Virus record (IMG/VR): IMGVR_UViG_3300032287_004484 | Span: 62,001 to 126,000 of that record | Reading direction: 5' to 3' (one strand) | Length of the DNA stretch: 64,000 nt | In this document: piece after piece, positions 5,195-51,771 of the stretch | How the letters are laid out: each line of letters begins with the position of its first letter | Numbering within the stretch: position 1 is the stretch's first letter | Made by a program: the position numbers and the translations under genes | The notes under the pieces: model-generated | What the model was told of the DNA's origin: nothing | What the model saw: only the letters and a program-made list of their open reading frames with translations | Databases searched by the model: none

Positions 5195-5215
5195 ATTATA
5201 TATTTAATTTTTTTT

Positions 5216-8095: not shown

Positions 8096-8098
8096 TTT

Positions 8099-10240: not shown

Positions 10241-10351
10241 ATCTAATATATATTTCTTATTATTACTGTTTTTATTTTTATAATTTTTGTAATTGATATA
10301 AAACTTTCTAAAGATTAAAGTTTTATTTTTTAAATATTATTTTGAAATTTT

Positions 10352-11314
10352 TTATTCAATTATAATTGGATAATTTCCTGATGGAAAAATATTATTAGGA
10401 TATATATCATTCCAATCAAAATATACTCCGACAAAATCATTAAAACCGTCTATTCCTGTAGTAGTTTGACTAGAGTAAAGAATGTTACTTCCATTATTAA
10501 TATCTATTTTTGAAAAAAAAGATGTTTTATTGTCCCTTACTGAAATTAAATAAGTATAATCAGGATTAGAGTTTTGAGGATAATAAAAAAACATCATACG
10601 TACTTGTTTATATGTATATGCTTTTTGATTTCTATAACTCAACACTCTTATTCTGAGAGATTTAAAAGCAGAATCACTTATAGAACCATATAAACCGCCA
10701 GCATCATTAGTCGTTATTCCAACATCGTCAAATCCATACAGAAGAGCTGCACCACTATCATAAGAAGAAGCAGTTATAGTAAAATATTTAAGTACAATTC
10801 TTATTCTAATAGTTGTTGAAGAACTACCAAAAGTATTATTTACTGTTATCGTATATGTATTATCATTTGATGCGCTAGGAGTAGTTCCGCTTATAATTCC
10901 ATTAGATGTATTAAAATTTAATCCAGAAGGTAAAGAAGGCGAAATGCTATATGTTAATGCTCCTACTCCATTACTTGTTAAAGTAGGAGTGTATGATACA
11001 GAAGTAGAAACTTGAGGTATCACATAATTAGAAGGATAAGATAATCCTTCTGGTTGTTGATAATTAAGCCATTGACTTTTTGTATTATCATATTTACTTT
11101 GTTTTGCTAATATTAAATTTTCATTATTAGTTCTTGTTTGTATATCACTAGATTGTATATGTCCGCTACTAACTAAACCAATATATTTAGTTTGTCCATT
11201 TACAACTATGTTAAATCTTCTATCTTGTCTAATAGAAGGACCATTTAAATCACTTATATTATCATAATATTGAATATTATAATTTATATTATTTTTTCTA
11301 TAATTAAGAGGCAC
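10352..11314 (-). CDS. Ig-domain fibre tip/adhesin
   Basis: YSISPSLPSGLNFNTSNGIISGT Ig motif; C-terminal domain ending PIIIE like those of 2768..5194 and 5216..8095; GTG start. Confidence 0.65.
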   Translation of the reverse strand: MPLNYRKNNINYNIQYYDNISDLNGPSIRQDRRFNIVVNGQTKYIGLVSSGHIQSSDIQTRTNNENLILAKQSKYDNTKSQWLNYQQPEGLSYPSNYVIPQVSTSVSYTPTLTSNGVGALTYSISPSLPSGLNFNTSNGIISGTTPSASNDNTYTITVNNTFGSSSTTIRIRIVLKYFTITASSYDSGAALLYGFDDVGITTNDAGGLYGSISDSAFKSLRIRVLSYRNQKAYTYKQVRMMFFYYPQNSNPDYTYLISVRDNKTSFFSKIDINNGSNILYSSQTTTGIDGFNDFVGVYFDWNDIYPNNIFPSGNYPIIIE

Positions 11315-14801: not shown

Positions 14802-15740
14802 TTATATTCCTTGTTGATATAAACTATGAAAAACTATTTCTCTATTAATTCCTGTTCTATTTTTAAGATATAAATCATTATTAATATTAAAAATACAAAA
14901 ATAACTTAATGTATCACCACTTACTATTTTATCACTAAAAGTTATGATTTTACAATCTCCTCCGCCAGTGACCCAATAAATATCACCATTTAAATTAGCA
15001 TCGAAATTATCAAAAAAACTATATTTACCTGCTTTATCTATTGGAAAAATACCGCTTGCTCCAATAAATTTATAGCTTTGATTATTTTGAAAAATTATTT
15101 TTTTAACTTCTAATCCAAAATTAATTTGATCTCCAGCAACTGATAAACTAGTCCAAATAGGTGCTGTTATATATTCTAAAAAAACTAAAATTTTATTTTC
15201 ATTTGGATTAATAATAGTTATTAAAGCATTACTACTTGTATATACATTAATTATTTTTGAAGAATTATTTTGGATAGTGTACTGTGATCCAACAGATATT
15301 TGTGTTGGTTCAGGCATTTTAAGATAAAAATTTCCTGTTCCTAACCCGTAAAGGTGTACAAAATTAGACGATAATAAATCTAATTGAAAAGGGTTGTCTT
15401 TATATAAAGAAACATCAACCTTTGTTAAAGTATTAATGTTAGTTATTCTTCTATAATAATCATTAGTATTAATAAAAAAACTTTCAGAAGTATGATTTCC
15501 AATTACTTGAAATAAATTTTCATTATAATATATTAAGTCACCTTCACTATAATAAGTATTAGATGCCCAAGATATTGGTGATAAAGTTATAGTTGCATCA
15601 GAAGATAATAATTCTTTATATGCGTCTCCAAAATTTTTAAAATATAATTTACCCTCAATAACTCTTAGATCAACAGCATTAGTTCCTTCGCCTATTCTAA
15701 AAACCTCTGATGTTGTTCCAGTAATATTTATTGCTTTCAT
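14802..15740 (-). CDS. virion fibre protein with CBM5/12-like module
   Basis: SWASNTYYSEGDLIYYNENLFQVIGNHTS resembles a carbohydrate-binding module; paralogous to 13506..14801. Confidence 0.6.
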   Translation of the reverse strand: MKAINITGTTSEVFRIGEGTNAVDLRVIEGKLYFKNFGDAYKELLSSDATITLSPISWASNTYYSEGDLIYYNENLFQVIGNHTSESFFINTNDYYRRITNINTLTKVDVSLYKDNPFQLDLLSSNFVHLYGLGTGNFYLKMPEPTQISVGSQYTIQNNSSKIINVYTSSNALITIINPNENKILVFLEYITAPIWTSLSVAGDQINFGLEVKKIIFQNNQSYKFIGASGIFPIDKAGKYSFFDNFDANLNGDIYWVTGGGDCKIITFSDKIVSGDTLSYFCIFNINNDLYLKNRTGINREIVFHSLYQQGI

Positions 15741-15765: not shown

Positions 15766-18700
15766 TTAATTTTCTTTATAAAATCTTAAATTCATAATAT
15801 TTCCAGTATTATTTTGAAATGTAACATAATTAGTTGCACTTGAAATATAAATATTGAATTTATTAGCTGTTCCAGGATTTTTAGAAATATTTGAACTACT
15901 TGTATCTAATGTAATAATTGGTTCTAAAGTATTATTACTGACTACTTTTAACGCCATTACAACATTTATAGTAGGATCATTTAAATCAAAAATACGATAT
16001 ATTCCAGTTTCTTGTGACCCAAAAACATCATATATATCTTTAGAAAAACCATTATTTAGATTAACATCTATTTTATTATATTGTAAAAATTTAATTTCTT
16101 CTGTGTTTAAAATATCATCTTTTATTTGATTATAAATTGGTGAATTAGAACTTGTTTGAATATTAGTTATATAATTTTTACCGACTAATTGAGAGCAACC
16201 CCAAGGATCCCCATCAAAACCATGCTGATAATATTTTAGTTTATTAGTAGATGAATCAAAAAATAACCAATAAAAATATCCAAATTTACTAATATTAACA
16301 TTACTTCTTAAAGACGTTCTAATATCAAATGGTAAATCAAACGGTATTCCTAAACGATGTAAGTTACCATCTGGATTAAACAGCATAGTATATAATTTAT
16401 TAGTATTTTTTTCATATCCTATAACCGTACTCCATCCTTCAATTAATTTTGAAGATCCTAATAAAATCCAAGAACTTGAACTTAATTGATTTTCAATTTC
16501 ATTATTAGTTCCAGTTATTATACTGTTTGTACTATCAACTAAACATTTATTTATTTTTTTAGTAATAGGATCTATCCAAATATATAGTAAATTATCTCCA
16601 TATTCTATAACTTGTAAATAAATTTGCTGTAAATTACTATTGCTTTCAAAACTTATTTCATTGTCATACCATTTAGAACTTGGAAATACTCTTGATCTTG
16701 AAATAACAAAATTCCTTAATTTAACTTTTAATTCTGAACTTTTATTTTTATGATAATAATAAATTACTGTAAAAGAATCTTTAGAAATAGATACTAAGTG
16801 TGCTGATATTAATAACTTTTCACTTCTAAATATTTTATCATCGTCAATATATTCACTATCTAAATTAAAAGATGGAATAGAATATACTGGATAATTTTTA
16901 ACTATTTGTCCTTTCCAGTTTATTCCACCTATTTTTATAGAATTGTTTAAATATAATCTTTGACGATTAGCAGAATCTGATAAAGAATCTTCTTTTACTG
17001 TTAAGACTCTTTCATATTCAATTTTATCTGTAAAAGATAATGAAATAGTTTTTGAATATAATTTATTAATTGTTCCACTAGAAGATGTAAATGTAGAATA
17101 ATAATCATCTATATCATCACTTTTTATTGTATAAAATCTATTTCCAAGAGATGTTTCATTAAAAGTTGTTTTTGGAACAGTATCAATAATAGCATAATTA
17201 TCTTTATTAAAGAAAACTACATTGTGATAATTTGAAGATCCAGATGAATTATTATAAAATAAAAGTAAAGATTCGTCATATGATGAATTAAATGGTTGTG
17301 GTTCATCTAATAATTTGAATGTTCCAGATGCTGATATAAATGTTCCAGATGCTGACATAGTAAAGAAGGTTGAACCTTCAACTAAAGTGTTATTAAAATT
17401 TACATCATAATAATCTCCTGATCCACTAGAGTTTCCAAAAATAAAATATCTATTATCTAAATTTTTATCTTTAACAAAATTAATACCACTATATGCTCTA
17501 TTAGAATTAATAGGCGATGAAAAATTAATTGAAGATAAATTTGTAAAGTTTAATTCTCCTTGTGAATCAAATAAAGAATTCGATAAATTTAAAGCACCTA
17601 TATTAGTTCCACTGCTTGAAGGATATACTAAATATCCATAATTATCTTTTTTAATAAACGAAACTGTATAATCGTATTCAACTCCACTTAAAGAATTTAT
17701 TGCTGGATTATAAATTTTTGCATTACTTGTATAATTAGTTCCAAATGGTGTACCAAAATCATTAGATGTTAATAAAGGAAGTAAACTTATTCCATGAATA
17801 TTATATTTTTTAGTGTTTGTTTTTAAAACTACTCCGATAACATTAGAGTCTAAATTAACGTCTATGATCTTTCCAAAATTTTTACTATAATTAGCTGATG
17901 GAGAAATTGTTACTTTATTAGGTGATTTTGTGATTGAACCAGTTGATGATATTTTTATAAATTCTACATAAATATTACTAGAATCACTCCATACAATTAA
18001 AAGAACTTTTAATACATCTTTATTAACAAAATACGTATCTAATATTTTTCCATTTGATAAAGATATACCATCTAAAGCAGTATAATAAGAATTTAATTGA
18101 TGTACATCTTTTTTTATTGTAGATACAATACTTATATTATAAGTAGTCACTGTTGTTTGTCTTAATAATAAATAATTATTATTATCAAAAAGGTGACTTT
18201 GAAAAAAATAATTATTTGTATAATTTGATATTTCAAAATTATTATTTTTATTAATGTTTTTAATAAAATTAGGTCTAAAATTATAAACAGAATATTTATA
18301 CGAATTGTCACTATTTATGTAAGTAATAAAAACAGTTGATTGTCCAGCTGATAATAAATTTAAATTGGTGATATTAGTTAATGTATCTTCAAATGAATTA
18401 TATAATTGTCCACCATCATTGTAAAAAGCCTTTAAATTTATTTTTCCATTTTTAGTATATGAAACTATAAAAATATCTTCATTTAGAATACACGTTCCTA
18501 TACTTTCAATTTTCGTTGTTAAACCTTGTTCAACGTAAATTGGAATTGATAGTGATTTAGATGCATTAATAGACGTAGATTGTGGATATTTCCAATTTTT
18601 TTCCCAAGAATCTAAAATAACTAATTTAAGATCATATTTTTCCGCAATACCTTTATCTAAAAATAAAATTGCTATGTCATTATTATCTAATTCAATTAAT

Positions 18701-21700
18701 TTAATTATATTACCAGTAATAGTTATGTGATTAGTTGTTAAAGTTCTATAATCTATTGTTTCATTATCGTCAAAAAACTGTAATTTTCCATCTTGATCAA
18801 ATATTTTTATCTTAGAGCCGTAAATATTAGAATAAGCCACCATAAAAGAATTTGTAGAAAATTTACAAATTGAAGGATAAGTTGATAATGTGTTTTCACT
18901 ATCAATAATTTTAATATCAGTAATTGTTACTTGTTTTAAAGGAGAATAATTGTAAGTAATTAATCCAATTTCCGTAATTGATCTTTGATAAACTATTCCT
19001 ATTCTATTAATTCCTATATCTCCTATTTCAAATATAAAAGGAGAAGCTATTGGAAAGTCTGGATTACCAATTACTGCTGCTGAATTTTCTAAATAATTTC
19101 CACTAGTATCATATAATTTAATTTTTATATAATATTGGTTATTTACCTGAATTACATATCCAACGGCAAAATATTTTTCGTTAAAATTACACGCTCTTAT
19201 TTCTGAACACTCAATATCTTCTACTAATATTTCATTAGCAACTTGAACAAGATCAAGGGCCCCTAAATCTGATGTATCTTCAGATTTAACAAAGTTAATA
19301 ATTTTTATTTTTGGTCTAGATCCATTATAACTTTTAAAAGCAGTAATTGAAGAATTATTTATAAATAAAGTAGATCTTTTTATTTCAGAATCATAATTAC
19401 CTATGATTGGAAATAAATTATCACTTAAACCTAAAGTTGTTCCTTCTGAGTTTTGCGCTCTTAAAAATTCATAAAATTTATATTTTGTTATTTCTGATTT
19501 TAAATATAAAGAATTTTCTTTATATTTAACAGAATCTAAAACTAATGATTTACTTAAATATTTTTCTGATATTATTTTTGTGACACTTTTATTAGAATTT
19601 ATATCATTTAAATCTTTATCTAATAATTTAATGAATTCTCTTTGTCTTAATCTTCTTTTTATATCTAAATTACAATAACTAACATAAGATGCAAATTCAT
19701 AATCCTTTTTTCTTAATAATCCATATAATGCCATATTTTGTTCAAAAGGCATAGGATATAAATAATTCCATCTACTATTTACTAAATAATTTATATCGTA
19801 TAATCCAGTATCAATACTCATTTCTGATTTTTCATTTGGTGTTTCAAAAATTAATTTTTTTCTATAAAAATCAGATACTGAACTAAAAAACCCATCATTA
19901 GTTGGAACGAAAGATTCATCAAAAAAGTTAATTCCTATAAATGGTAATGTATTAGCACTAGCACCTGGACTATAATCTAAGAAATCAAAATCATTAACAA
20001 GAGTTCCTTCTGTAAAATCTTCAGTTGAATTTAAATCTTTTTCTAAAGATAAATTTTCTAATAAAATATTATCATTTCCAATATAAATTGGTTTATCATA
20101 TAAGTGATTGCTAAATTTAACAATATATTTTTCTTCATCAAAAGAAAAATTAGTAAATTCTGGATCTTTATAAACGATATTATACGAATCATTAATATTT
20201 ACTGTTATAGGTCCAGAAAAACCAAAGTTTTCATTGCTTATTAATCCATTTACTTTCCATGCTTTTTCAACTTCATTTTCTTTTTGTAATTTATAATTTA
20301 TATCAGATATTTTATCTTGTAAATTAATCTTTAATTGATCGTTTATATCTGTGTGTTTAATTGAAAAATCAGTGCTATTTCCATCTATAACGTCATATTT
20401 ATTATATGAAACAAAAACTCTTCTAGGTATAGCGTCTGGATGAAATTTAAATACTCCTACATGCACATCTAAGAATACTTCATCTAATTGTTGAGAATTA
20501 GTTGTTATTTGATCTAAAGCTCTTGCTAATATTTGATATTTTACTGGACGAAAATGAGGAGCTTCTGCTCTAGCATTTCTTTGTACATTTATATCTCCAA
20601 ATTCATCTTCTATTAAAATGTTATCTGGATAATTACCTGAAATAGTTCTATAAAATATTTCTATAAATGAAGATGACGAATTGCTTTCTCCTAATAAATC
20701 TTCTGTAACTATATATGGAGTCCCTTGTTGTAATCCGTTTATAGATAAATCATTATAACCTTTTAAACTTAAAAAATACCATTTAGATGATTCTATTTTT
20801 GGTATTTGAGTTAAAATTTCAGTGTCAGGATATAATAAAGAAACTTTAGAATAAATGCTTTGTTCTCCAAAAGATCCATTTATTCCGCTTAAAACTTGAC
20901 TTTTTATTAATTCTGATTCTATAGTATATTGAGAATCACTTATTGCTTGAGGAATATTTTTAAAAATTATAAATTCAGATGTAGTATCTATATCTTTAAA
21001 TAAACCAGATATTGTTAATTCATCTTGTGTAACATTAATTATTTTACCTATTTGTAAATTTCCTTGTCCCTGAGAAATAAGTATAAAATCTTTTCTAGTT
21101 ACTGTCTGTATTCCTATAGTAGTAAAATCATTAATATCATCAGTTCTTATTATTTTTATATATTTAGTATTAATGTCAGGAGTATCTGTAAATGAAACCT
21201 TTAAGTTATCAGTTAATTGATCATAAGATGTTATTTTGTAAGTAATACCTTCTTGTCCAATAGATATTGAATTGTTTTTAATTCCTATGTTAAAAGATAT
21301 AACATCTACAAATTTTAATCCAAAAATATTATTTTGAATTTCATTTAAAATAAAAGGTATATTAGTTAAATTACCTTCGCTAATATCTGTATAATCATGT
21401 GGTATATTAGTTTCACCATAGTTAATTAATTTAGTTTCATTATAATCATATCCAAGAACTGGATCAGTAATTTTACCTTGTCCTTCTTCCCAATCTAATA
21501 ATCTTCCTTTTATATCAACAAGATGAATCTTATCGTTTGTTTTAATTGAAAAATAACTGTTATAGTGATTTATAGGAGCCCTTAAAATATTTTGAATTCC
21601 ACCAGTTATTCCTGCAATTGAGGTTATATTTTCTATTGAATCTACAACTATTGAAGTAGCATTATCACTTGTTTTATAAACTAAAATAGATAAAACACCT

Positions 21701-22776
21701 ACAGTTTTAAGATCAATAAAACCACCTGGTTCTATTTGATTATTAATATTATCTCTATAAAGGGGTATTTTGACATTGATTGTAAAATTAGTTTCATCTA
21801 TTGAACTTATTTCAAATTCACCATCAAATGTTTTATTATCGCTTTTAGATATTTTTAAGAAATTAATTGCACCTGAAACATTACTTATAAAATCATTACT
21901 TATATCACGATTATTTTTTTTAAGTTTTAATTGATGAATTATTCCACTAACGTGTGTAACACTTTCAATTTGATAAATAACATCTAATTGAGTATTAATA
22001 GGAGGAATAAAATTTGATACTTCTATTCCTTTGAAGATTTCCCATCTTGATTTTTTAATGTTATAAGAAATAAGATCTCTTCTATAAATTGGATAAAGAT
22101 CTCCATTTGGTATTTCATCTATTTGTTGTCCAACCTCAAAAGTAGGAACATTCATAAATAATACTAAAGATCCAGAGTTTAATGTATAATTTGTTTTTAA
22201 ATTTTTTGATAATTTTACTGCTGTTCCAGTTATTCCTATTACTTGAGTTCCATCTTCAAATTCTGATCCAAAAATAACAGATCCAACGCCAATAGAATTT
22301 TGAAAACTATTTAAATCGGTTGCTGTACTAACATTAAAAGTATTTCCACCGCTAACTGTGGTTTGTACTGTTGTATAAAAACTTGTTGGTTCTAAGAAAA
22401 TTATTTCATCGTTATATTTTATTTGTCCGCTTTTTATTCCAAAAGATTTAATATAAGTTCCTTCAACTTCATTTAAATCTTTTTTAATGTCAAAAACTTG
22501 AAAATTATCTCCAACTTGATAGAATGATCCATTTGAAATTAATGAATTTATTTTTTGATATTCACTAAATAACTTATTATCGTTATGTATTAAATCAATA
22601 AAAGTCTGATCTAATTTAGATGAATCAACATCATCACCAAATTTAATTAACCTTACAGTTTCGTCAGTATAAACGTTACCTACATCTGAGGAACTAAAAC
22701 TAGCATTAGCAGTAGTTGGAATATCAATAAATGAATTACTTTGTATTGAGAAATATTTTTTTCTTAAAACGCTCAT
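15766..22776 (-). CDS. giant (2336 aa) baseplate-attached fibre/structural protein
   Basis: Uninterrupted 7-kb ORF next to baseplate genes; propeller-like repeats in the C-terminal half. Confidence 0.6.
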   Translation of the reverse strand: MSVLRKKYFSIQSNSFIDIPTTANASFSSSDVGNVYTDETVRLIKFGDDVDSSKLDQTFIDLIHNDNKLFSEYQKINSLISNGSFYQVGDNFQVFDIKKDLNEVEGTYIKSFGIKSGQIKYNDEIIFLEPTSFYTTVQTTVSGGNTFNVSTATDLNSFQNSIGVGSVIFGSEFEDGTQVIGITGTAVKLSKNLKTNYTLNSGSLVLFMNVPTFEVGQQIDEIPNGDLYPIYRRDLISYNIKKSRWEIFKGIEVSNFIPPINTQLDVIYQIESVTHVSGIIHQLKLKKNNRDISNDFISNVSGAINFLKISKSDNKTFDGEFEISSIDETNFTINVKIPLYRDNINNQIEPGGFIDLKTVGVLSILVYKTSDNATSIVVDSIENITSIAGITGGIQNILRAPINHYNSYFSIKTNDKIHLVDIKGRLLDWEEGQGKITDPVLGYDYNETKLINYGETNIPHDYTDISEGNLTNIPFILNEIQNNIFGLKFVDVISFNIGIKNNSISIGQEGITYKITSYDQLTDNLKVSFTDTPDINTKYIKIIRTDDINDFTTIGIQTVTRKDFILISQGQGNLQIGKIINVTQDELTISGLFKDIDTTSEFIIFKNIPQAISDSQYTIESELIKSQVLSGINGSFGEQSIYSKVSLLYPDTEILTQIPKIESSKWYFLSLKGYNDLSINGLQQGTPYIVTEDLLGESNSSSSFIEIFYRTISGNYPDNILIEDEFGDINVQRNARAEAPHFRPVKYQILARALDQITTNSQQLDEVFLDVHVGVFKFHPDAIPRRVFVSYNKYDVIDGNSTDFSIKHTDINDQLKINLQDKISDINYKLQKENEVEKAWKVNGLISNENFGFSGPITVNINDSYNIVYKDPEFTNFSFDEEKYIVKFSNHLYDKPIYIGNDNILLENLSLEKDLNSTEDFTEGTLVNDFDFLDYSPGASANTLPFIGINFFDESFVPTNDGFFSSVSDFYRKKLIFETPNEKSEMSIDTGLYDINYLVNSRWNYLYPMPFEQNMALYGLLRKKDYEFASYVSYCNLDIKRRLRQREFIKLLDKDLNDINSNKSVTKIISEKYLSKSLVLDSVKYKENSLYLKSEITKYKFYEFLRAQNSEGTTLGLSDNLFPIIGNYDSEIKRSTLFINNSSITAFKSYNGSRPKIKIINFVKSEDTSDLGALDLVQVANEILVEDIECSEIRACNFNEKYFAVGYVIQVNNQYYIKIKLYDTSGNYLENSAAVIGNPDFPIASPFIFEIGDIGINRIGIVYQRSITEIGLITYNYSPLKQVTITDIKIIDSENTLSTYPSICKFSTNSFMVAYSNIYGSKIKIFDQDGKLQFFDDNETIDYRTLTTNHITITGNIIKLIELDNNDIAILFLDKGIAEKYDLKLVILDSWEKNWKYPQSTSINASKSLSIPIYVEQGLTTKIESIGTCILNEDIFIVSYTKNGKINLKAFYNDGGQLYNSFEDTLTNITNLNLLSAGQSTVFITYINSDNSYKYSVYNFRPNFIKNINKNNNFEISNYTNNYFFQSHLFDNNNYLLLRQTTVTTYNISIVSTIKKDVHQLNSYYTALDGISLSNGKILDTYFVNKDVLKVLLIVWSDSSNIYVEFIKISSTGSITKSPNKVTISPSANYSKNFGKIIDVNLDSNVIGVVLKTNTKKYNIHGISLLPLLTSNDFGTPFGTNYTSNAKIYNPAINSLSGVEYDYTVSFIKKDNYGYLVYPSSSGTNIGALNLSNSLFDSQGELNFTNLSSINFSSPINSNRAYSGINFVKDKNLDNRYFIFGNSSGSGDYYDVNFNNTLVEGSTFFTMSASGTFISASGTFKLLDEPQPFNSSYDESLLLFYNNSSGSSNYHNVVFFNKDNYAIIDTVPKTTFNETSLGNRFYTIKSDDIDDYYSTFTSSSGTINKLYSKTISLSFTDKIEYERVLTVKEDSLSDSANRQRLYLNNSIKIGGINWKGQIVKNYPVYSIPSFNLDSEYIDDDKIFRSEKLLISAHLVSISKDSFTVIYYYHKNKSSELKVKLRNFVISRSRVFPSSKWYDNEISFESNSNLQQIYLQVIEYGDNLLYIWIDPITKKINKCLVDSTNSIITGTNNEIENQLSSSSWILLGSSKLIEGWSTVIGYEKNTNKLYTMLFNPDGNLHRLGIPFDLPFDIRTSLRSNVNISKFGYFYWLFFDSSTNKLKYYQHGFDGDPWGCSQLVGKNYITNIQTSSNSPIYNQIKDDILNTEEIKFLQYNKIDVNLNNGFSKDIYDVFGSQETGIYRIFDLNDPTINVVMALKVVSNNTLEPIITLDTSSSNISKNPGTANKFNIYISSATNYVTFQNNTGNIMNLRFYKEN

Positions 22777-46600: not shown

Positions 46601-47875
46601 GGAAAAGGTTTAGACTTAGTAATCAAACCGGGTGCTCCACGTTGGACAAAAGGAAGTCAAAGCGCAACTGTTATAGTATGTATTTGCTTACCTGCTCCAG
46701 AAGATTTAATTACTGGATGGAAAGGATTTTTAAAAGCACTTTTAGTCTTACTCAAACCTATTGCTAGAGTAATAAATCTTACATATACTGGAATAAATAA
46801 TGATATCGTTCTTCAAATAAGATATGATACATATATTAAAAATAATGAGGAAAAAATACGTAGCTTGATAGCCAAGAAAAAAGAATTTGAAGATGAAGTA
46901 AAAAAAATAGAAAAACAAATTACAGAAATAAAAAACAAACAAAAAGAAGAAATAAAAAAAGATCCTCTAGCTTTACCTTCTAATATTGAACCTCAAATAA
47001 CGATTAAAAAAAATCAAATACAAGATTTATTTAGTAAATCTTCTAATATTCGTAAAGAAATAGAAGAAATAGCAGAACTTAATAGATTTACTGTTTTTGG
47101 AGATAATAATCCGGCAATTCTGATTAATGATCTTATAAGTAAAATTGAAATAGAATTAAGTATTGAAGATGCTTTAAAAAATAAAAACCCAACTTCAAGA
47201 GAAGAAGCTGGCAATCAAGTTTATGATTCTGTAGACCCAGATTTAGAAACAGATACTGGAAGTATATTAGGAGACATTTCTAAATGGTGGAATGATGCTG
47301 GTACTGTATTAGATAATGGATTAGAATCTAGGGCAAATAAATTTTCTGGATCTTTAGGTAATTATCCAGATTTTGTAGGAATGACTCTTGGATCAATAGC
47401 GCCAGGTTTATTTACTTATATTAAAGGCTTTTTACATAAATTAAGAAAATTAAATAGAAAAGAAAGCACGTTCTCTTTATCAGAAAAATATGAGTTAATG
47501 ATAAAACCAATTACAGAGAAAATTAAAGAAATAGAAGAAATTATAAAGATTATAGACGCTATAGTTAATGCAATTGATGCAATTCTAGGTATTAGTTTGA
47601 CATATTTAGTAATTAAATCTAATGGTGGAGTTACTGATATTATAGAGCAATTAGAAAATTCAACAGGGTTTCCAAATGAAACTAAAAGGCAAATTATTTT
47701 AGGTGGAGTCTTAGCAGCTGGAACATTAGATCCTAATGGAAATGAATTTAATATGCAAGGATATTTTGATGAAGCATCACAAGAATTTAATGAACTTGCG
47801 GGTGATTTATTTGATAGTTTAAAACAAAATAACGAACAAAAAGGAATAAGTTTTTTAAATAAGTTTTTTGGTTAA
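43610..47875 (+). CDS. large (1421 aa) tail/baseplate-associated protein
   Basis: Long ORF ending the baseplate operon; central beta-rich region, C-terminal amphipathic helices and coiled coil. Confidence 0.55.
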   Translation: MSSINDVSRKLYVDVNTTIINQQLNGLLNVNKIYNVLYLTTLHVETADQDIFPPINLSARIKSTLQTYRIIFDRHLTTKNISFVFNTSGISPTPVPDDDQNRYIFSTLIKTLANNLNSYVESDQEYFLKKTKESLDSLFSSLTVGLIDYRKYFSSDISSNLISYSLVQDIASETSEQRRSFFDTDFTPDQTIALNNVNINNPIGYDQTGPQDWRGLFNNVITVLNQVIYNNLNLYFIRNQMFNSIQSIINDESISLQNKIDFSKDYIVSIKEEIVNNVKKLKILSPVTVSNDWNNRSVFYYTSLNAYSKSKINEVDVSNKIIKLSPYLGLTTQAINQTIKFATFKEGINIEKNFQNTVIQKNTPNLFSLQIIETNSTGETITKDVNFSLSNTDFNQNFITFSNATSDPLKNGWGIYLKNSKITNSVSFYRDNENSFIFSKNSTNSSGSYVYFDFYIDNNNLNSLLNLSFKYEILNNSFNQNELKVQIEYFKNYISGSNYNVSLPLKTFNNLNKTLNNQQNFTSTFNTNSYNYYRFKIYLSSETNNLFTIKFNDFYIGTSSSPSSTSISITNPNALINLIYRTSGYKNNKDLSFSSFQATNISDLNITSTTYKIKVSSEPYHVGSSKKIKFYNINSNLKWLFLSDITTTQQIYSGLNPITFVETGREKKYYDSFISLIKRVFTILNAYALSRLLVPEAFDEETSTFNIGINVTPSVKVLIQDLIDDLTIDVDFRSNFEKDPRSNFMQKNPQDNLNRKSVEWKTAGLQDAMGLKKFAKFKSDLEKIKRALKIAKSVLEAIRAFIDILSDLIEMGEDILGALLDQVIKQVEGVVDNIASTGVYWLPLIRYFATTDSWWWFKDNKRKNLAKIPGFDEINTLITTPFPNNSNISVNNSFLLELEQLFKSNDKMMQDDLSGDLSNIGLRNKNSDNWQLGVPFLPFRSTTYEEFKNVIIDAFLDEDDLPELGLRYETTKNKDDTASTDTVLEGGLFNKNRKGTDGKGLDLVIKPGAPRWTKGSQSATVIVCICLPAPEDLITGWKGFLKALLVLLKPIARVINLTYTGINNDIVLQIRYDTYIKNNEEKIRSLIAKKKEFEDEVKKIEKQITEIKNKQKEEIKKDPLALPSNIEPQITIKKNQIQDLFSKSSNIRKEIEEIAELNRFTVFGDNNPAILINDLISKIEIELSIEDALKNKNPTSREEAGNQVYDSVDPDLETDTGSILGDISKWWNDAGTVLDNGLESRANKFSGSLGNYPDFVGMTLGSIAPGLFTYIKGFLHKLRKLNRKESTFSLSEKYELMIKPITEKIKEIEEIIKIIDAIVNAIDAILGISLTYLVIKSNGGVTDIIEQLENSTGFPNETKRQIILGGVLAAGTLDPNGNEFNMQGYFDEASQEFNELAGDLFDSLKQNNEQKGISFLNKFFG

Positions 47876-48180
47876 TCTTCTCCAAGAATTTTCTTTTCCC
47901 ATTTTCTCATATATTTTATGTTATAATAAGTTTTACCCGTAATTATCCAGTTAAATGGAAAAAGTAAAATCAATATAAAATAATTTAGATAAAATGGGAA
48001 TATTGAAAGTCTCCACCATATACTAGGGGTTTTATTTTCAACTATTTCCTTAATTTCGTAAGGCATATCATAAAAAATTTCATCTAATTTTTCACACTGA
48101 TAATCTGTAAGATTTATTTCTTGTTTTAGATATTTTATAAAATCAAATTTTCTTATACTTTGTTTTTTTATTTCTGGCAT
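47872..48180 (-). CDS. small membrane protein
   Basis: Hydrophobic WWRLSIFPFYLNYFILILLFPFNW; GAGG RBS; own promoter. Confidence 0.7.
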   Translation of the reverse strand: MPEIKKQSIRKFDFIKYLKQEINLTDYQCEKLDEIFYDMPYEIKEIVENKTPSIWWRLSIFPFYLNYFILILLFPFNWIITGKTYYNIKYMRKWEKKILGED

Positions 48181-48202: not shown

Positions 48203-48240
48203 ATTATAATATTTTTTAAACTAAGTGTTTAAACCTAAAA
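48203..48240 (-). promoter_or_regulatory. phage early-type promoter TTTTAGGTT-TAAACA-N17-TATAAT
   Basis: One of five copies of the motif with a 17-bp spacer. Confidence 0.8.
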
Positions 48241-48257
48241 ATATATCCCATATTATT

Positions 48258-48295
48258 TTTTAGGTTTATACATCTATTATAAAATATTATATTAT
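48258..48295 (+). promoter_or_regulatory. phage early-type promoter TTTTAGGTT-TATACA-N17-TATTAT
   Basis: Same motif, divergent from the previous copy. Confidence 0.8.
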
Positions 48296-48323: not shown

Positions 48324-48590
48324 ATGACAAGAGAAGAGGTATTAAAACTAATTGAAGATAAGAATAAAAATTATCGTGTAACTTTTACTAAACAAAATGG
48401 TGATAAAAGAATCATGATTTTTACAAGATCTAATGAAATAATGGAAGATATGAATTTAGTTCCATCTGGAACTGGATCTAATTCTGACGTAGAAACTCTT
48501 AGAGTTATGGAGTTATGTGACGATGGAAAAGCTCAATGGAGATCCTTTAAATATTCTTCGATTATTTCTTTAGAAGAATATAAAGGTTGA
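48324..48590 (+). CDS. SH3-fold / WYL_2 (DUF2693-like) protein
   Basis: VTFTKQNGDKRIM...WRSF; GGAGA RBS. Confidence 0.75.
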   Translation: MTREEVLKLIEDKNKNYRVTFTKQNGDKRIMIFTRSNEIMEDMNLVPSGTGSNSDVETLRVMELCDDGKAQWRSFKYSSIISLEEYKG

Positions 48591-48687: not shown

Positions 48688-50538
48688 ATGGAGAATAAGA
48701 ATATGACTGAAACTGAAATAGTTGAGCAACTTATAGCAGCAAAAGATGCCTACTATAATGGTGAACCATTTATGACAGATTCTGATTTTGATTTTTTAGA
48801 AAATAAATTAAAATTAATTAATCCAAAAAATAAATATTTCAACATGGTAGGTATTTCTTCTCCACATTCTAAAAAAATATCTCATTATTATCGTATGCGA
48901 TCTCTTCAAAAAGCTAACGATGAAAATGATTTTAGATTGTGGTATCAAAGAAATAAAATTCCTTTTAATACCAATTTAGCAGTGATGCATAAAATTGATG
49001 GATTATCAGGAAGCGCTAAATATGAAAATGGTAAAATAGTATATTTAGCAACAAGAGGTAATAGTTTAGAAGGACAAGACGTTTCACATTTGATACCTTA
49101 TATTAATATACCGCAAGAAATTTCAGAACAGGGTGCTGTTTATATTAGGGGAGAATTTGTAATTAAGAAAAACTCTTATCTTTCTAATTTATATCCAGAT
49201 TCACCTCTAAGAAATTTAGCCAGTGGCATTATTAATCGTAAAGAAATGTTAAGTGAAGCTAAGTATCTTTCATTTATAACTTATGGTTTAGAAGGTCAAT
49301 CTTATGAAACTGGTTTAGAAACAGAAAAAATCAAAAAATTAAAAGAATTTGGTTTTGATACTTTAAAGCCATTTCTTTGTGAAGATTATGCACAATTAAA
49401 ACAATTTTTAAGTGATGCAATTAATTGGAGAGAAGATGTTGAATATGAAATTGATGGAATTGTAATAGTAATTAACGATATTTCAATTCAAAGATCTTTA
49501 GAAGACGATAACGAACATCACCCACAATGGAACATAGCATGGAAATTTCCATCTCAAGGTTCTTGGACTACTTTAAAGAGTATTGAGTGGAATACTTCTA
49601 AACATGGTCGTTTAATTCCAGTTGGTATTTTTGAACCAGTTATTATAGGAGGAGCACAAATTACTCGTGCTACTTTAAATAACTATAAACAAATATTGGA
49701 TCTTAAATTAAATATTGGAGATTCTATTTTTGTACAAAGAGCAAATGATGTAATTCCAAAAATTACAGAATGTAAAAAAATAGTTCCTTACGAACCAATA
49801 CTAGATGTTAGATGTGGTTGCGGTACTTTTTCTGATTTAAGTTTAGATGGAGTTCATATTTATTGTAAGAATCCTAAGTGTAGAGAAAAAATAATTGAAC
49901 AAATTTTATTCTGGGTACAAAAAATTGGAATTGAATTTTTCTCAAGATCAACAATTACTACTCTTTATGATTTAGGTAAATTAAATTCAATAGAGGATCT
50001 TTATCGTTTAGATTATAGTACTTTATCTGGGATACATGGATTAGGAGATAAAAAAATCTATAATATTATAAACGAAGTAAAAAGAACTTCTTCTATGTCA
50101 CAGTTAGATTTTTTAAGTTCACTTGGTATTCCTATGGTTGGAAAAAGAGTATTTCAAAAATTAGGGATATTTACAATTCAAGATTTTTTAAACTGGAAAA
50201 GTTTTGCGTATGTTACTGGTGAAAAAATAATAGAATGGAAATCAGATTCTTTTAATATAGAATTATTTAATTCATTAGTAAAGTGTATTAATTTTACAGA
50301 AGAAGAAAAAATGAATTCTGCTAATAAAATTGGTGTTTGTGCGACTGGTAAGGGTCCATTTACTAGAAATGATTTAGTTAAAAAAATTAACGAATCTAAA
50401 GATTATTTCTGGGTTGATTCTATTAATAATTCTGTTAAAATACTTTTATGTGATGACCCAAGTGATAATTCGAGTAAATTACAAAAAGCAAGAAAAAGCG
50501 GGATTAAATTAGTAAAATATTCAGATTTTACTTTTTAA
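48688..50538 (+). CDS. ligA: NAD-dependent DNA ligase
   Basis: AYY..MTDSDFD, MRSL, KIDG active site, TRG, IRGE, DGIV, AWKF, Zn finger, HhH, BRCT. Confidence 0.95.
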   Translation: MENKNMTETEIVEQLIAAKDAYYNGEPFMTDSDFDFLENKLKLINPKNKYFNMVGISSPHSKKISHYYRMRSLQKANDENDFRLWYQRNKIPFNTNLAVMHKIDGLSGSAKYENGKIVYLATRGNSLEGQDVSHLIPYINIPQEISEQGAVYIRGEFVIKKNSYLSNLYPDSPLRNLASGIINRKEMLSEAKYLSFITYGLEGQSYETGLETEKIKKLKEFGFDTLKPFLCEDYAQLKQFLSDAINWREDVEYEIDGIVIVINDISIQRSLEDDNEHHPQWNIAWKFPSQGSWTTLKSIEWNTSKHGRLIPVGIFEPVIIGGAQITRATLNNYKQILDLKLNIGDSIFVQRANDVIPKITECKKIVPYEPILDVRCGCGTFSDLSLDGVHIYCKNPKCREKIIEQILFWVQKIGIEFFSRSTITTLYDLGKLNSIEDLYRLDYSTLSGIHGLGDKKIYNIINEVKRTSSMSQLDFLSSLGIPMVGKRVFQKLGIFTIQDFLNWKSFAYVTGEKIIEWKSDSFNIELFNSLVKCINFTEEEKMNSANKIGVCATGKGPFTRNDLVKKINESKDYFWVDSINNSVKILLCDDPSDNSSKLQKARKSGIKLVKYSDFTF

Positions 50539-50969: not shown

Positions 50970-51053
50970 TTTATTTCTCCTAATAAAATATCTTTATGTT
51001 ATATTTAAAATTACTTCTATACTTTATTGATTGTATAGTTTAAAGTGATATTT

Positions 51054-51091
51054 TTTTGGGTTTAAACACTTAATACAAAAAATAGTAGTAT
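51054..51091 (+). promoter_or_regulatory. promoter for sRNA unit 1 (TTTTGGGTT-TAAACA-N17-TAGTAT)
   Basis: -35 at 51063-51068, -10 at 51086-51091. Confidence 0.7.
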
Positions 51092-51097
51092 ATATTA

Positions 51098-51194
51098 TAG
51101 AAAAGAAAAAATAATAAAAGCAATTCTAATTTTTAATTTCGTCTCCAGTAAAATTCCTAGTCCACTCTAAGAAATTAGAGTGGATATTTTTTTT
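51098..51194 (+). ncRNA. putative small RNA 1
   Basis: Promoter, A-rich leader, conserved 30-nt core 51120-51149, terminator; no start codon; 5' end inferred from promoter position. Confidence 0.65.
51161..51194 (+). terminator. intrinsic terminator
   Basis: tccactctaa-GAAA-ttagagtgga followed by ta and T8. Confidence 0.9.
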
Positions 51195-51208
51195 ATCTAA
51201 AGATTTTC

Positions 51209-51246
51209 TTTTAGGTTTATACATCTAGTATAATAAATAGTAAAGT
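51209..51246 (+). promoter_or_regulatory. promoter for sRNA unit 2 (TTTTAGGTT-TATACA-N17-TAAAGT)
   Basis: -35 at 51218-51223, exactly 155 bp after the previous copy. Confidence 0.7.
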
Positions 51247-51252
51247 AGTTAT

Positions 51253-51349
51253 ATAATAAAAAAAAACGCAATTCTAATTTACAATTTTGTCTCCAGTTTA
51301 AATTTAAGTTTTTAGATCCACCCTGAGAAATCAGGGTGGATATTTTTTT
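51253..51349 (+). ncRNA. putative small RNA 2
   Basis: Core 51268-51297 is 27/30 identical to unit 1; same architecture and length. Confidence 0.65.
51316..51349 (+). terminator. intrinsic terminator
   Basis: atccaccctga-GAAA-tcagggtggat followed by a and T7. Confidence 0.9.
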
Positions 51350-51363
51350 ATTTAACGGTCTAT

Positions 51364-51401
51364 TTTTAGGTTTATACATTAAATTTACAAAATAATATAA
51401 T
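51364..51401 (+). promoter_or_regulatory. promoter TTTTAGGTT-TATACA-N17-TATAAT for 51433 onward
   Basis: -35 at 51373-51378, again 155 bp after the previous copy. Confidence 0.8.
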
Positions 51402-51432
51402 AGAAAGAAATAAATATAGAAAAATATATAAT

Positions 51433-51771
51433 ATGGAAGAAGAAGAAAAAAGTAATTCTTTTGGATTAGAAGGAAATCAAGAAAGATATGATGATAATGT
51501 TGATAAATTTCTTAAAAGAATACAAGATTTTAAAAAAAATCACTGGAACTCCGTAGATCATATTGTAGATGTTTCTATTACAAATTTTATTTTATTAGAA
51601 CATTTTTTAACTATTATTATTTCAAAAGTAGTAGAAATTCAAAATAGAGGAGATTCTTCTTTTAATAAAGAAGAAAAAATAGAGGAAGTATTTGAAAACT
51701 TATTAAGTGCTTTTTCTATCTATAAAGAAGATTTATTAGAGATATTAGCTAAAAATAGAGATGAGGAGTGA
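51433..51771 (+). CDS. hypothetical protein
   Basis: 112-aa ORF downstream of a promoter. Confidence 0.7.
   Translation: MEEEEKSNSFGLEGNQERYDDNVDKFLKRIQDFKKNHWNSVDHIVDVSITNFILLEHFLTIIISKVVEIQNRGDSSFNKEEKIEEVFENLLSAFSIYKEDLLEILAKNRDEE

What the first reader, a model, noticed from the sequence alone, without database searches (positions are those of the whole stretch)
51054..51401. Tandem pair of phage small RNAs with an anti-SD-like seed in 155-bp promoter-RNA-terminator cassettes
Seen in sequence: the same promoter recurs with -35 boxes at 51063, 51218 and 51373, exactly 155 bp apart. Each of the two intervals holds an A-rich leader, a 30-nt core (GCAATTCTAATTT-TT/AC-AATTT-C/T-GTCTCCAGT, 27/30 identical) and a GAAA-loop terminator. 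The two stems differ only by two compensatory base-pair swaps (tccactctaa/ttagagtgga vs tccaccctga/tcagggtgga), while leaders and linkers have diverged. Neither unit has a start codon. Inference: selection is acting on two ~97-nt RNAs. The conserved UCUCCAG is complementary to GGAGA, the RBS used by several genes here. A-rich leader plus seed plus U-tail is the layout of base-pairing bacterial sRNAs, so they may silence host (e.g. defence) or phage mRNAs early in infection. Alternatives are antitoxin-RNA or CRISPR-repeat mimics, or empty promoter/stem-loop cassettes like the PeSL elements of T4-type phages.
Basis: partly seen in the sequence, partly recalled or inferred. Interest (0 to 1): 0.88.

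Follow-up and report, generated by a model that had tools for sequence, protein, structure and literature searches.

The report
Paired small-RNA genes in phage cassettes
An uncultivated, distantly T4-like giant phage from lakes carries two neighbouring copies of a short non-coding RNA gene, each with its own promoter and terminator. Relatives keep it in the same genomic slot, but nothing here shows what it targets or that it is expressed.

Summary
Three promoter boxes lie 155 bp apart. The two intervals each hold an A-rich leader, a 30-nt core (27/30 identical) and a GAAA-loop terminator.

Related metagenomic phages carry the unit in the same slot, between a 142-aa gene and a 112-aa gene. Five relatives have two copies, three have one diverged copy, and one has none. 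Others have tandem 59-aa protein cassettes there instead.

- **Terminator:** the helix covaries (6 of 10 pairs with compensatory change).
- **Core:** it is predicted single-stranded, it has no conserved reading frame, and it is better conserved than linkers, spacers and terminator sequence.
- **Promoter:** T-run, AGGTTTATACA, then TAnnnT 17 nt after TATACA. It recurs before genes in all relatives.
- **Known families:** no Rfam family matches.

Best reading: two about 86-96-nt early small RNAs. They are the non-coding payload of PeSL-like terminator/promoter cassettes of a T4-superfamily jumbo phage.

The anti-Shine-Dalgarno function is not supported. Only 6 of 51 genes here use GGAGA. Pairing with start regions is not enriched. 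No candidate target beats shuffled controls. Expression, host and target remain unknown.

The parts
51051..51091 (+). Promoter P1: T-run 51051-51057, GGGTTTAAACAC 51058-51069 (-35-like TAAACA 51063-51068), 17-nt spacer, -10 TAGTAT 51086-51091
   Evidence: Same layout as the 19 motif instances.
51098..51194 (+). Predicted small RNA 1 (about 95 nt; 5' end inferred from the -10 box, 3' end in the U-tail)
   Evidence: Covariance model R1 match, 109.7 bits. Fold. No expression data.
51099..51119 (+). A/G-rich leader of RNA 1
   Evidence: Purine-rich in all homologues.
51120..51149 (+). Core 1: blocks GCAAT and AATTTCGTCTCCA are conserved; predicted mostly unpaired
   Evidence: probability unpaired for UCUCC = 0.87.
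51160..51194 (+). Intrinsic terminator 1: 11-bp stem, GAAA loop, A + T8 tail
51203..51246 (+). Promoter P2: T-rich run, AGGTTTATACAT 51213-51224 (TATACA 51218-51223), -10 TAAAGT 51241-51246. A second, perfect TATAAT lies at 51252-51257.
51254..51349 (+). Predicted small RNA 2 (about 86-96 nt, depending on which -10 box is used)
   Evidence: R1 match at 51246-51349, 119 bits. Fold.
51268..51297 (+). Core 2 (27/30 identical to core 1)
51316..51349 (+). Intrinsic terminator 2: 11-bp stem, GAAA loop, A + T7 tail
   Evidence: The strain variant 51321 C>T keeps a G.U pair.
51358..51401 (+). Promoter P3 (AGGTTTATACAT 51368-51379, TATACA-N17-TATAAT) driving the 112-aa gene 51433-51771 and the downstream replication and baseplate genes
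48225..48295 (.). Divergent pair of promoters of the same class: AGGTTTAAACA on the minus strand (48226-48236) for gene 47872-48180, and AGGTTTATACAT on the plus strand (48262-48273) for gene 48324-48590

Best explanation
These are two paralogous, independently transcribed early small non-coding RNAs of about 86-96 nt.

**Layout of each unit**
- It is made from a sigma-70-type, T4-early-like promoter: T-run, AGGTTTATACA, then TAnnnT 17 nt after TATACA.
- It starts with a purine-rich leader.
- It continues into an unstructured, conserved core: GCAAU, an A/U-rich stretch, then GUCUCCA.
- It ends at a strong Rho-independent terminator with a U-tail.

**Genomic setting.** Each terminator plus the next promoter forms a PeSL-like composite module. 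The RNAs are therefore the non-coding payload of modular cassettes in a plastic slot of a distantly T4-like (T4-superfamily) freshwater jumbo phage. Relatives carry 0, 1 or 2 RNA cassettes there, or small protein cassettes.

**Inferred mechanism.** The single-stranded core acts in trans by base-pairing with an mRNA of the unknown host or of the phage. The C-rich UCUCC is the most likely nucleation point.

**Shown:** the anatomy, the non-coding nature, terminator covariation, conservation and copy-number pattern among relatives, and absence from Rfam.

**Inferred:** transcription itself, the 5' ends, action in trans, and any target.
For: **Anatomy and chance level:**

**Promoter class:** 19 instances, 17 of them intergenic and correctly oriented. 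All keep T1, A2 and T6 of the -10 box at a 17-nt spacing.

**Source and phage type:** the window comes from a 290-kb viral contig. It encodes a T4-type portal, terminase and baseplate protein, a FEN/RNase H-like exonuclease and an NAD-dependent ligase.

**Homologous units in the same slot:**
- L012, L015, L016 and L018 have two each.
- L014 has at least two.
- L003, L023 and L025 have one each, with GCAAU and UCUC(C/U) retained.

**Covariance model R1:** it recovers 11 units at E <= 1e-6 and finds no other copy in the window.

**Terminator helix:** 96% of cells are paired. Six of 10 pairs have changes on both sides. None of 500 shuffles reached the covariation score, and slid controls gave 29-51% paired.

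**Core:** predicted mostly unpaired. Its identity between clades is 0.83-0.86. That compares with 0.40-0.75 for linker 1, spacers and terminators, and 0.57 at four-fold sites of the FEN gene.

**Coding ruled out:** a 1-nt indel inside the core and variable loop and linker lengths leave no conserved frame on either strand.

**Modularity:** the slot holds promoter-ORF-terminator cassettes for a 59/60-aa protein in L019-L022 and L027, and nothing in L007. This fits PeSL-type modular exchange (PMC2839356, PMC4122927).
Against: - **No expression evidence:** no RNA run could be listed.
- **No target:** start-region pairing is not enriched, and the best sites are at shuffled-control level.
- **Conservation is only relative:** the core is no better conserved than synonymous third positions of the adjacent 112-aa gene (0.86). 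Selection is therefore shown only relative to the rest of the spacer.
- **Similarity may be partly copied:** the two paralogues share clade-specific changes, so gene conversion could explain part of their likeness.
- **Weak -10 box in unit 2:** TAAAGT sits at the canonical spacing.
- **Dispensable:** one relative (L007) lacks the unit altogether.
Confidence: 0.5

Rival explanations
1. This is a regulatory or recombinational cassette array with no functional RNA product. The terminator-promoter (PeSL-like) modules insulate and boost early transcription and mediate modular exchange. The 60-70 nt between them is a leftover that stays similar through recent duplication and gene conversion.
For: - Copy number varies between 0, 1 and 2 among relatives, and the slot can be replaced by protein cassettes.
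- The paralogues share clade-specific substitutions and an indel, which points to concerted evolution.
- Core identity equals local synonymous-site identity in the 112-aa gene.
- L014 has identical 3' halves in both units.
- PeSL modules are documented as terminator/promoter composites that drive indels (PMC2839356, PMC4122927).
Against: - The G/C-containing blocks GCAAU and UCUCC survive in the distant one-copy clade, where four-fold sites are near saturation at 0.43-0.62.
- Within the same spacer, linkers, loops and inter-cassette spacers diverge much more.
- Both copies keep an intact promoter and terminator in every two-copy genome.
Confidence: 0.2
2. This is a protein-binding decoy or sponge RNA rather than a base-pairing regulator. 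The A-rich leader, the U-rich stretch before the hairpin and the U-tail would titrate an RNA chaperone or RNA-binding protein, such as an Hfq-, S1- or RegA-like factor, or a host ribonuclease or defence toxin. A type III antitoxin mimic is one such possibility.
For: - The purine-rich leader, the UUUUAG stretch before the terminator and a tail of 7-9 U are conserved in most units. From recalled knowledge, not tested here, these resemble the Hfq-binding module of enterobacterial sRNAs.
- No base-pairing target stands out.
- Two copies would raise the dose.
- An 88-aa protein with a weak Sm-like WYL_2 match is expressed from the same promoter class 3 kb upstream.
Against: - No protein partner is identified, and the WYL_2 hit is below Pfam's threshold.
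- There is no 36-nt-type tandem repeat and no adjacent toxin gene, unlike ToxI-type systems.
- The units share no structured element beyond the terminator.
Confidence: 0.15
3. This is a cis-acting leader or attenuator. The cassettes are tandem attenuators that gate read-through from P1 and P2 into the 112-aa, FEN and baseplate gene block, by analogy with delayed-early transcription in T4. The core would be the binding site of an antitermination factor or part of an antiterminator structure.
For: - The units are co-oriented with, and directly upstream of, the downstream gene block.
- In unit 1, an 8-nt stretch of the core can pair with the loop and 3' arm of its terminator (pair I1).
Against: - That alternative pairing is weak: -5 to -9.6 kcal/mol, against -14 to -19.6 for the terminators of the two-copy clades.
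- It uses different segments in different units and is lost in unit 2 and in the L015 clade.
- P3 sits directly before the gene, so read-through is not needed.
- A linker of 10-19 nt separates the core from the terminator.
Confidence: 0.06
4. The units encode small peptides. Candidates are the minus-strand frames starting MYKPK at 51224 and 51379, or a plus-strand frame through the core.
For: the ORF listing reports minus-strand ORFs of 32 and 60 aa that both begin MYKPK.
Against: - The shared MYKPK is the reverse complement of the promoter box. At 48262 the same box gives MYKPKK followed by a stop.
- Loop lengths of 4-8 nt, linker indels and compensatory stem changes break any frame among relatives.
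- The plus strand has no ATG, and a 1-nt indel lies in the core.
Confidence: 0.02

Closest known systems
PeSL (promoter-early stem-loop) cassettes of T4-type phages (Arbiol et al. 2010, PMC2839356; Comeau et al. 2014, PMC4122927)
   Same: - A composite of a stem-loop terminator followed by a strong sigma-70-like early promoter with an AT-rich upstream tract.
- Repeated in the genome.
- Flanks small variable payloads.
- Payload differs between close relatives at the same site.
- The phage belongs to the T4 superfamily.
   Different: - Here the payload between two modules is a conserved non-coding core of about 65-75 nt rather than an ORF.
- The promoter consensus differs: TATACA-N17-TAnnnT preceded by AGGTT.
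- The stem sequence is not a shared family motif.
- Recombination and mini-circle formation were not tested.
- The papers read here do not describe an RNA payload: the term 'small RNA' has no occurrence in PMC2839356.
Trans-acting bacterial and phage small RNAs with a Rho-independent terminator (for example the prophage sRNAs DicF, IpeX, AgvB/AsxR, lambda PreS and P1 c4; review PMC12197685)
   Same: - Own promoter.
- About 90-100 nt long.
- Unstructured conserved region.
- Terminator hairpin with a U-tail.
- Paralogous ('sibling') copies.
   Different: - There is no sequence or Rfam relationship.
- No target is known and no expression data exist.
- It is encoded by a presumably virulent T4-superfamily jumbo phage, whereas most characterised cases come from temperate phages or prophages.
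C-rich-seed small RNAs of low-GC bacteria that pair with Shine-Dalgarno regions (RsaE/RoxS type; recalled from knowledge, not tested)
   Same: A single-stranded C-rich pentamer (UCUCC/UCCC) in an A/U-rich RNA, complementary to GGAGA/GGGA.
   Different: - There is only one C-rich motif, and it is not presented in hairpin loops.
- There is no homology.
- No enrichment of pairing with start regions was found here.
Rfam RF02846 (Ref84, Enterococcus sRNA 84), the best sub-threshold Rfam match
   Same: An A/U-rich 5' part followed by a terminator hairpin. Scores are 33.4 and 24.1 bits.
   Different: The scores are well below the gathering score of 52. The alignment rests on the terminator and on base composition, so this is not a member.

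Membership tests
PeSL cassette (T4-type phages) | Sigma-70-like early promoter with an AT-rich upstream tract | tested here: met
   A T-run, TATACA, a 17-nt spacer and TAnnnT are present in 17 correctly placed intergenic instances and in the alignment. This is a consensus match only; promoter activity was not assayed.
PeSL cassette (T4-type phages) | Stem-loop terminator immediately upstream of the promoter, forming one composite module | tested here: met
   The hairpin and T-run end about 20-25 nt before the next promoter box at both junctions. The same holds for the protein cassettes of L019 and L027. The helix covaries.
PeSL cassette (T4-type phages) | Modules flank payloads that differ between related phages (indels or replacements at the module) | tested here: met
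   The same slot holds 0, 1 or 2 RNA units, or 1 to at least 2 cassettes for a 59-aa ORF.
PeSL cassette (T4-type phages) | Many copies spread through hyperplastic regions of the genome | tested here: inconclusive
   Only five promoter boxes occur in this 64-kb window, all between 48.2 and 51.4 kb. Only two of them have a preceding hairpin. The other 226 kb of the contig was not available. Contigs from lake runs match the promoter segment alone.
PeSL cassette (T4-type phages) | Recombination between modules, giving mini-circles | not testable with these tools
   This needs inverse PCR on infected cells. Read laying showed no joints.
Base-pairing trans-acting small RNA | Discrete transcript with defined 5' and 3' ends | not testable with these tools
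   No RNA run could be listed.
Base-pairing trans-acting small RNA | Non-coding | tested here: met
   There is no ATG. A 1-nt indel lies in the core between clades, and no frame is conserved on either strand.
Base-pairing trans-acting small RNA | Conserved, accessible seed region | tested here: met
   GCAAU and GUCUCCA are invariant in the 10 close units and recognisable in three distant ones. The probability that UCUCC is unpaired is 0.46-0.99 in 12 of 13 units.
Base-pairing trans-acting small RNA | Identifiable complementary target above chance | tested here: not met
   The best sites (ligase coding sequence 49423-49465, and 15108-15137 on the minus strand) are within the range of dinucleotide-shuffled cores. 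Start regions are not enriched. The host genome and 226 kb of the phage were not searched.
Any Rfam 15 family | Score at or above the family's gathering threshold | tested here: not met
   There are no matches at gathering threshold in the whole window. The best sub-threshold match is Ref84, 33.4 bits against 52.
CRISPR-repeat mimic (solitary repeat unit / RNA anti-CRISPR) | Sequence and structure similarity to a CRISPR repeat, conserved among homologues | tested here: not met
   There is only a 23-bit match to CRISPR-DR35 (threshold 35), and it lies on terminator 2. Terminator sequences are not conserved among relatives. The host's repeats are unknown.
ToxI-like type III antitoxin or pseudo-antitoxin repeats | Short (about 36-nt) head-to-tail repeats in one transcript, next to or matching a toxin system | tested here: not met
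   The repeat period is 155 bp, and each unit has its own promoter and terminator. No toxin gene is adjacent.

The most novel reading that the evidence does not exclude
The units are mobile non-coding 'morons': a new family of early small RNAs that T4-superfamily phages exchange through terminator/promoter modules. They would be interchangeable in the same slot with a 59-aa protein cassette. They would reprogramme gene expression by pairing, either with host start regions of the type GGAGA plus an A-rich spacer, or with the phage's own adjacent ligase mRNA. The ligase site is the top-ranked duplex in all five loci that contain it, and it shows one compensatory change between clades.
Probability: 0.12. 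Interest if true: 0.7.

Novelty: new member of a known kind. Interest (0 to 1): 0.45.

Why it matters
Small RNAs of virulent phages are barely charted; most characterised phage sRNAs come from prophages. This is a sibling pair of early sRNA genes with these properties:
- It is conserved across several uncultivated lake phages.
- It is packaged in the same terminator/promoter modules that shuttle small ORFs in T4-type genomes.

If confirmed, modular cassette exchange would be moving regulatory RNAs as well as proteins. It would also provide a defined RNA family (a covariance model exists) to look for in metatranscriptomes. The practical value is limited until a host or expression data are available.

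Tried and rejected
**Known families and genes**
- Rfam at gathering threshold on the whole window found nothing. A permissive scan gave only sub-threshold matches driven by the terminator.
- The tRNA/tmRNA scan found none.

**Searches for relatives**
- blastn of the region against GenBank phages found no match. tblastn of the 112-aa protein found none either.
- The portal protein is only about 24-27% identical to T4-superfamily phages.
- Exact-pattern scans of IMG/VR found only the source contig.
- The metagenome scan with the FEN alignment gave one unrelated distant locus.
- The scan of bacterial and archaeal genomes for the core gave 0 hits, so there is no host homologue or prophage copy.

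**Expression and strain variation**
- No RNA runs could be listed.
- DNA contigs of four lake runs showed variants in leaders, T-runs, spacers and one stem position, and none in the cores. With so few variants this is not significant.

**Target searches**
- The motif TGGAGACRAAATT with up to 2 mismatches gave 9 extra sites, against 7 expected.
- The duplex scan of both strands, start regions against random coding windows, a pairing-weighted local alignment against 150 shuffles and duplexfold against 15 shuffles were all at chance level.

**Ligase-site lead**
- It recurs as the top hit in five loci. It has one compensatory pair and a cognate advantage of 2-5 kcal/mol in the two close clades.
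- It fails in the distant clade: the L025 cognate pair is the worst pairing for that RNA.
- I kept it only as a lead.

**Other readings rejected**
- Antiterminator pairing between the core and the terminator 3' arm.
- Coding.
- A homologue of the 59-aa cassette protein in the window: none found.
- R-loop replication origin, considered by analogy with T4 oriF/oriG recalled from knowledge. Nothing supports it: cumulative GC skew follows gene orientation, with no turn at 51 kb, and each unit ends in a terminator.
Full report
**1. The observation**

The region 51033-51403 contains a three-copy direct repeat with a period of exactly 155 bp.

The repeat holds a promoter-like box:
- GGGTTTAAACAC at 51058.
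- AGGTTTATACAT at 51213 and at 51368.
- A further exact copy at 48262, and a diverged one on the opposite strand at about 48225-48236.

The two intervals each contain a purine-rich leader and a 30-nt core. The cores (51120-51149 and 51268-51297) are 27/30 identical and unique in the window; none of 100 shuffles gave a match.

Each interval ends in an 11-bp GAAA-loop hairpin followed by a T-run. These are the only two terminator-like sites in 48-54 kb, where 0.7 are expected by chance. The two stems differ by two compensated pairs.

There is no ATG in either unit, and no plus-strand ORF of 25 aa or more. The one qualification is that the first promoter copy is clearly diverged (64% identity over 61 nt).

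**2. Where the window comes from**

The window is part of a 290-kb IMG/VR contig. DNA runs that hold it are lake and freshwater metagenomes.

The window is about 25% G+C. It encodes these proteins:
- a T4-type portal;
- a T4-type large terminase;
- a T4 baseplate protein;
- a 5'-3' exonuclease of the RNase H/FEN type;
- an NAD-dependent ligase.

It has no close cultured relative. The portal is about 24-27% identical to T4-superfamily phages, and there is no nucleotide match in GenBank phages. This is a distant, uncultivated T4-superfamily jumbo phage whose host is unknown.

**3. The promoter**

I searched AGGTTTATACA, allowing one mismatch, in the window and eleven related loci. This gave 19 hits.
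- Seventeen are intergenic and point at a gene or at the RNA unit.
- They are generally preceded by a T-rich or AT-rich tract.
- They carry TAnnnT exactly 17 nt after TATACA: TATAAT, TATAGT, TATTAT, TATATT, TAGAAT, TAAAAT or TAAAGT.
- The two exceptions lie in a conserved coding sequence and lack a -10 box.

This is the layout of a sigma-70-type promoter. It resembles the T4/PST early consensus TTTACW-N17-TAYWAT quoted in PMC4122927.

Unit 2 of the window has a weak -10 box (TAAAGT) at the canonical spacing. A perfect TATAAT lies 11 nt further on, so its 5' end is uncertain by about 10 nt. Promoter activity is inferred, not shown.

**4. Relatives**

Homologues of the adjacent 112-aa protein and of the exonuclease led to loci L003-L027.

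The space between the divergent 142-aa gene and the 112-aa gene holds different things in different relatives:

| Loci | Content of the slot |
|---|---|
| Window, L012, L015, L016, L018 | Two RNA cassettes |
| L014 | At least two RNA cassettes; the contig is cut |
| L003, L023, L025 | One cassette with a shortened, diverged core (GCAAUUAUCUAGUCUCCC and variants) and a different terminator |
| L026 | An RNA-like unit with another C-rich motif |
| L007 | None; the spacer is 170 bp and holds only the last promoter |
| L019-L022, L027 | One to several promoter-ORF-terminator cassettes for a 59/60-aa protein |

So a terminator hairpin followed by an early promoter is the repeating module, and the payload varies. 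This is the PeSL design described for T4-type phages (PMC2839356, PMC4122927). Here the payload is non-coding.

**5. Structure and covariation**

A covariance model was built from four units with the terminator helix as its only structure.
- It recovers 11 units in six sources at E <= 1e-6.
- It finds no further copy in the 64-kb window.
- It does not reach the one-copy clade.

On the resulting alignment:
- 96% of helix cells form pairs.
- Six of 10 pairs show changes on both sides.
- None of 500 shuffles reached the covariation score or the paired fraction.
- Sliding the partners by 1-3 columns drops pairing to 29-51%.

The alignment was fitted to the model, which favours the structure. But the stems listed directly from the sequences show the same thing: TCCACTCTAA, TCCACCCTGA, TCTATCCCT, TCCATCCC, TCTATCCTA, TCCACCCTT, CCTTCTT and CCTTTCTT, each with its matching complement.

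Upstream of the hairpin the RNAs have no stable shared structure. The core is mostly unpaired in the ensemble. The exception is a weak A-run/U-run helix in some units.

**6. Non-coding**

The L015 clade has a 1-nt deletion inside the core relative to the window clade. Loops are 4-8 nt long, and linkers differ by lengths that are not multiples of three.

The minus-strand 'MYKPK' ORFs are simply the reverse complement of the promoter box. At 48262 the same box reads MYKPKK followed by a stop.

**7. Is the core conserved beyond neutral?**

Identities between the window clade and the L015 clade are as follows.

| Segment | Identity |
|---|---|
| Cores | 0.83-0.86 |
| Leader 1 | 0.82-0.86 |
| Promoter P3 | 0.86 |
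| Terminators | 0.56-0.70 |
| Linker 1 | 0.40 |
| Inter-cassette spacers (one also has a 20-nt indel) | 0.50-0.75 |
| Four-fold sites of the exonuclease gene | about 0.57 |
| Third positions of the small 112-aa gene | 0.86 |

So the core is clearly conserved relative to the rest of the spacer and to one neighbouring gene, but not relative to the other.

The stronger argument is depth. In the one-copy clade four-fold identity is 0.43-0.62, which is near saturation for this composition. The G/C-containing blocks GCAAU and UCUC(C/U) still remain, in about 25% G+C sequence.

The two paralogues share clade-specific states: T or A at core position 6, and the 1-nt indel. Meanwhile linker length marks unit 1 and unit 2 as orthologous across clades. 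The duplication is therefore old, and the copies evolve in concert, either by gene conversion or under a shared constraint.

Close strains in four lake runs vary in leaders, T-runs, spacers and one stem position (51321 C>T, which keeps a G.U pair). They do not vary in the cores. The counts are too small to be significant.

**8. Function: what was tested**

The anti-SD idea:
- Only 6 of 51 ORF starts have GGAGA. About half have no recognisable SD at all.
- Duplex energies of the cores with 51 start regions are not better than with 600 random coding windows: mean -9.3 against -8.7 kcal/mol, p = 0.07.
- The best start region (-16.8) equals the mean best value of shuffled cores, -16.0.

Two sites stand out slightly in a whole-window scan:
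- 15108-15137 on the minus strand, inside gene 14802-15740.
- 49423-49465 inside the adjacent ligase gene.

The ligase site deserves a closer look.
- It is the top-ranked duplex in every locus that contains it: window, L012, L016, L003 and L025.
- The predicted interaction uses almost the whole core. The 5' GCAAUUCU block pairs with GGAAUUGU, and the 3' UCUCCA block pairs with UGGAGA.
- Between the two close clades, the core change U6 to A is matched by a synonymous GGA to GGU change in the target.
- Cognate pairs are 2-5 kcal/mol better than non-cognate ones.

Against it:
- The site encodes a conserved ligase motif (W-R-E-D-V-E-Y-E-I-D-G-I-V), so its recurrence is not independent evidence.
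- The distant clade shows no cognate advantage; L025 is worst with its own target.
- Shuffled cores reach the same energies somewhere in the window. With duplexfold, 1 of 15 shuffles beat it and several came within 0.3 kcal/mol. With a pairing-weighted alignment, 14 of 150 and 32 of 150 shuffles scored at least as well.

I keep it as a lead only.

An attenuator model is rejected. Alternative pairings with the terminator 3' arm are weak and not conserved.

No Rfam family matches, and there is no CRISPR-repeat or ToxI-like layout.

The core is absent from 185,579 bacterial and archaeal species genomes as an exact degenerate pattern.

**9. Best reading**

These are two sibling early small RNAs of about 86-96 nt, each an independent transcription unit. 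They are carried as non-coding payload in PeSL-like cassettes of a T4-superfamily lake phage.

The single-stranded core is the functional part. Base-pairing in trans is the most economical mechanism. The UCUCC motif, a U-rich stretch before the hairpin and a long U-tail are the features expected of such RNAs; the Hfq-module comparison comes from recalled knowledge.

What remains open is whether the RNAs are made, what they bind, and who the host is.

**10. Novelty and score**

Phage small RNAs with their own promoter and terminator are a known kind, and so are PeSL modules. What is new:
- this RNA family, which is not in Rfam and has no match in GenBank phages;
- the finding that such modules can carry an RNA payload, in a slot where relatives carry a small protein.

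Noticed in passing
L019:1-590, L020-L022, L027:1-800 (same slot as window 50970-51432): Some relatives fill the slot with one to three tandem cassettes for a 59/60-aa protein (MSNLEVKKTYSVGG...). Each has its own AGGTTTATACA promoter and terminator. L027 also seems to have a copy on the opposite strand, and L026 has a 79-aa homologue on the minus strand. No Pfam match was found, and there is no homologue in the window.
   Followed up: partly
window 48324-48590 (+): An 88-aa gene is driven by an exact copy of the same promoter box. It gives a sub-threshold Pfam match to WYL_2, an Sm-like SH3 barrel (E = 1.6e-4; 22.3 bits against a cut-off of 26.7), and matches PHROGs 1086 and 2267 of unknown function. 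It might be an RNA- or ligand-binding early protein. No PDB sequence match was found.
   Followed up: partly
window 49423-49465 (+), inside the ligase gene 48688-50538: This is the best predicted duplex partner of the cores in five loci. It shows one compensatory change between clades (core U6A with GGA>GGT). It is not above shuffled controls, and the distant clade does not support it.
   Followed up: yes
window, all 51 ORF starts: About half of the genes have no recognisable Shine-Dalgarno sequence and instead have A/T-rich leaders such as ATATAATATG. Only 6 of 51 have GGAGA. This may say something about the unknown host's mode of translation initiation.
   Followed up: no
L014:1-55 and L014:180-234: The two units of L014 have identical 3' halves (seed, linker and terminator). 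This points to very recent gene conversion or duplication, or to an assembly artefact at the contig end.
   Followed up: no
window core position 6 and the 1-nt indel at core position 10; L015, L016 and L018 units: The paralogous units share clade-specific states, while their linkers mark them as orthologous across clades. This is concerted evolution of the two copies.
   Followed up: partly
L026:1333-1480: A divergent unit follows the same promoter: an A/U-rich RNA with GUCCC...UUCCCUG and the terminator CCACTTTT/AAAGTGG. GCAATTATC follows directly after that terminator, resembling the start of the one-copy-clade core.
   Followed up: no
window 2768-11314 (-) and 15766-22776 (-): A run of large minus-strand ORFs carries He_PIG Ig-like domains. 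A 2336-aa ORF lies nearby. These are probably tail-fibre or decoration proteins.
   Followed up: no
window 51043-51091 and 51361-51402: Many unrelated contigs in the lake runs match only these promoter segments, with 5-8 mismatches, and this produces depth spikes. The promoter box is therefore multi-copy in this phage population or its relatives.
   Followed up: no
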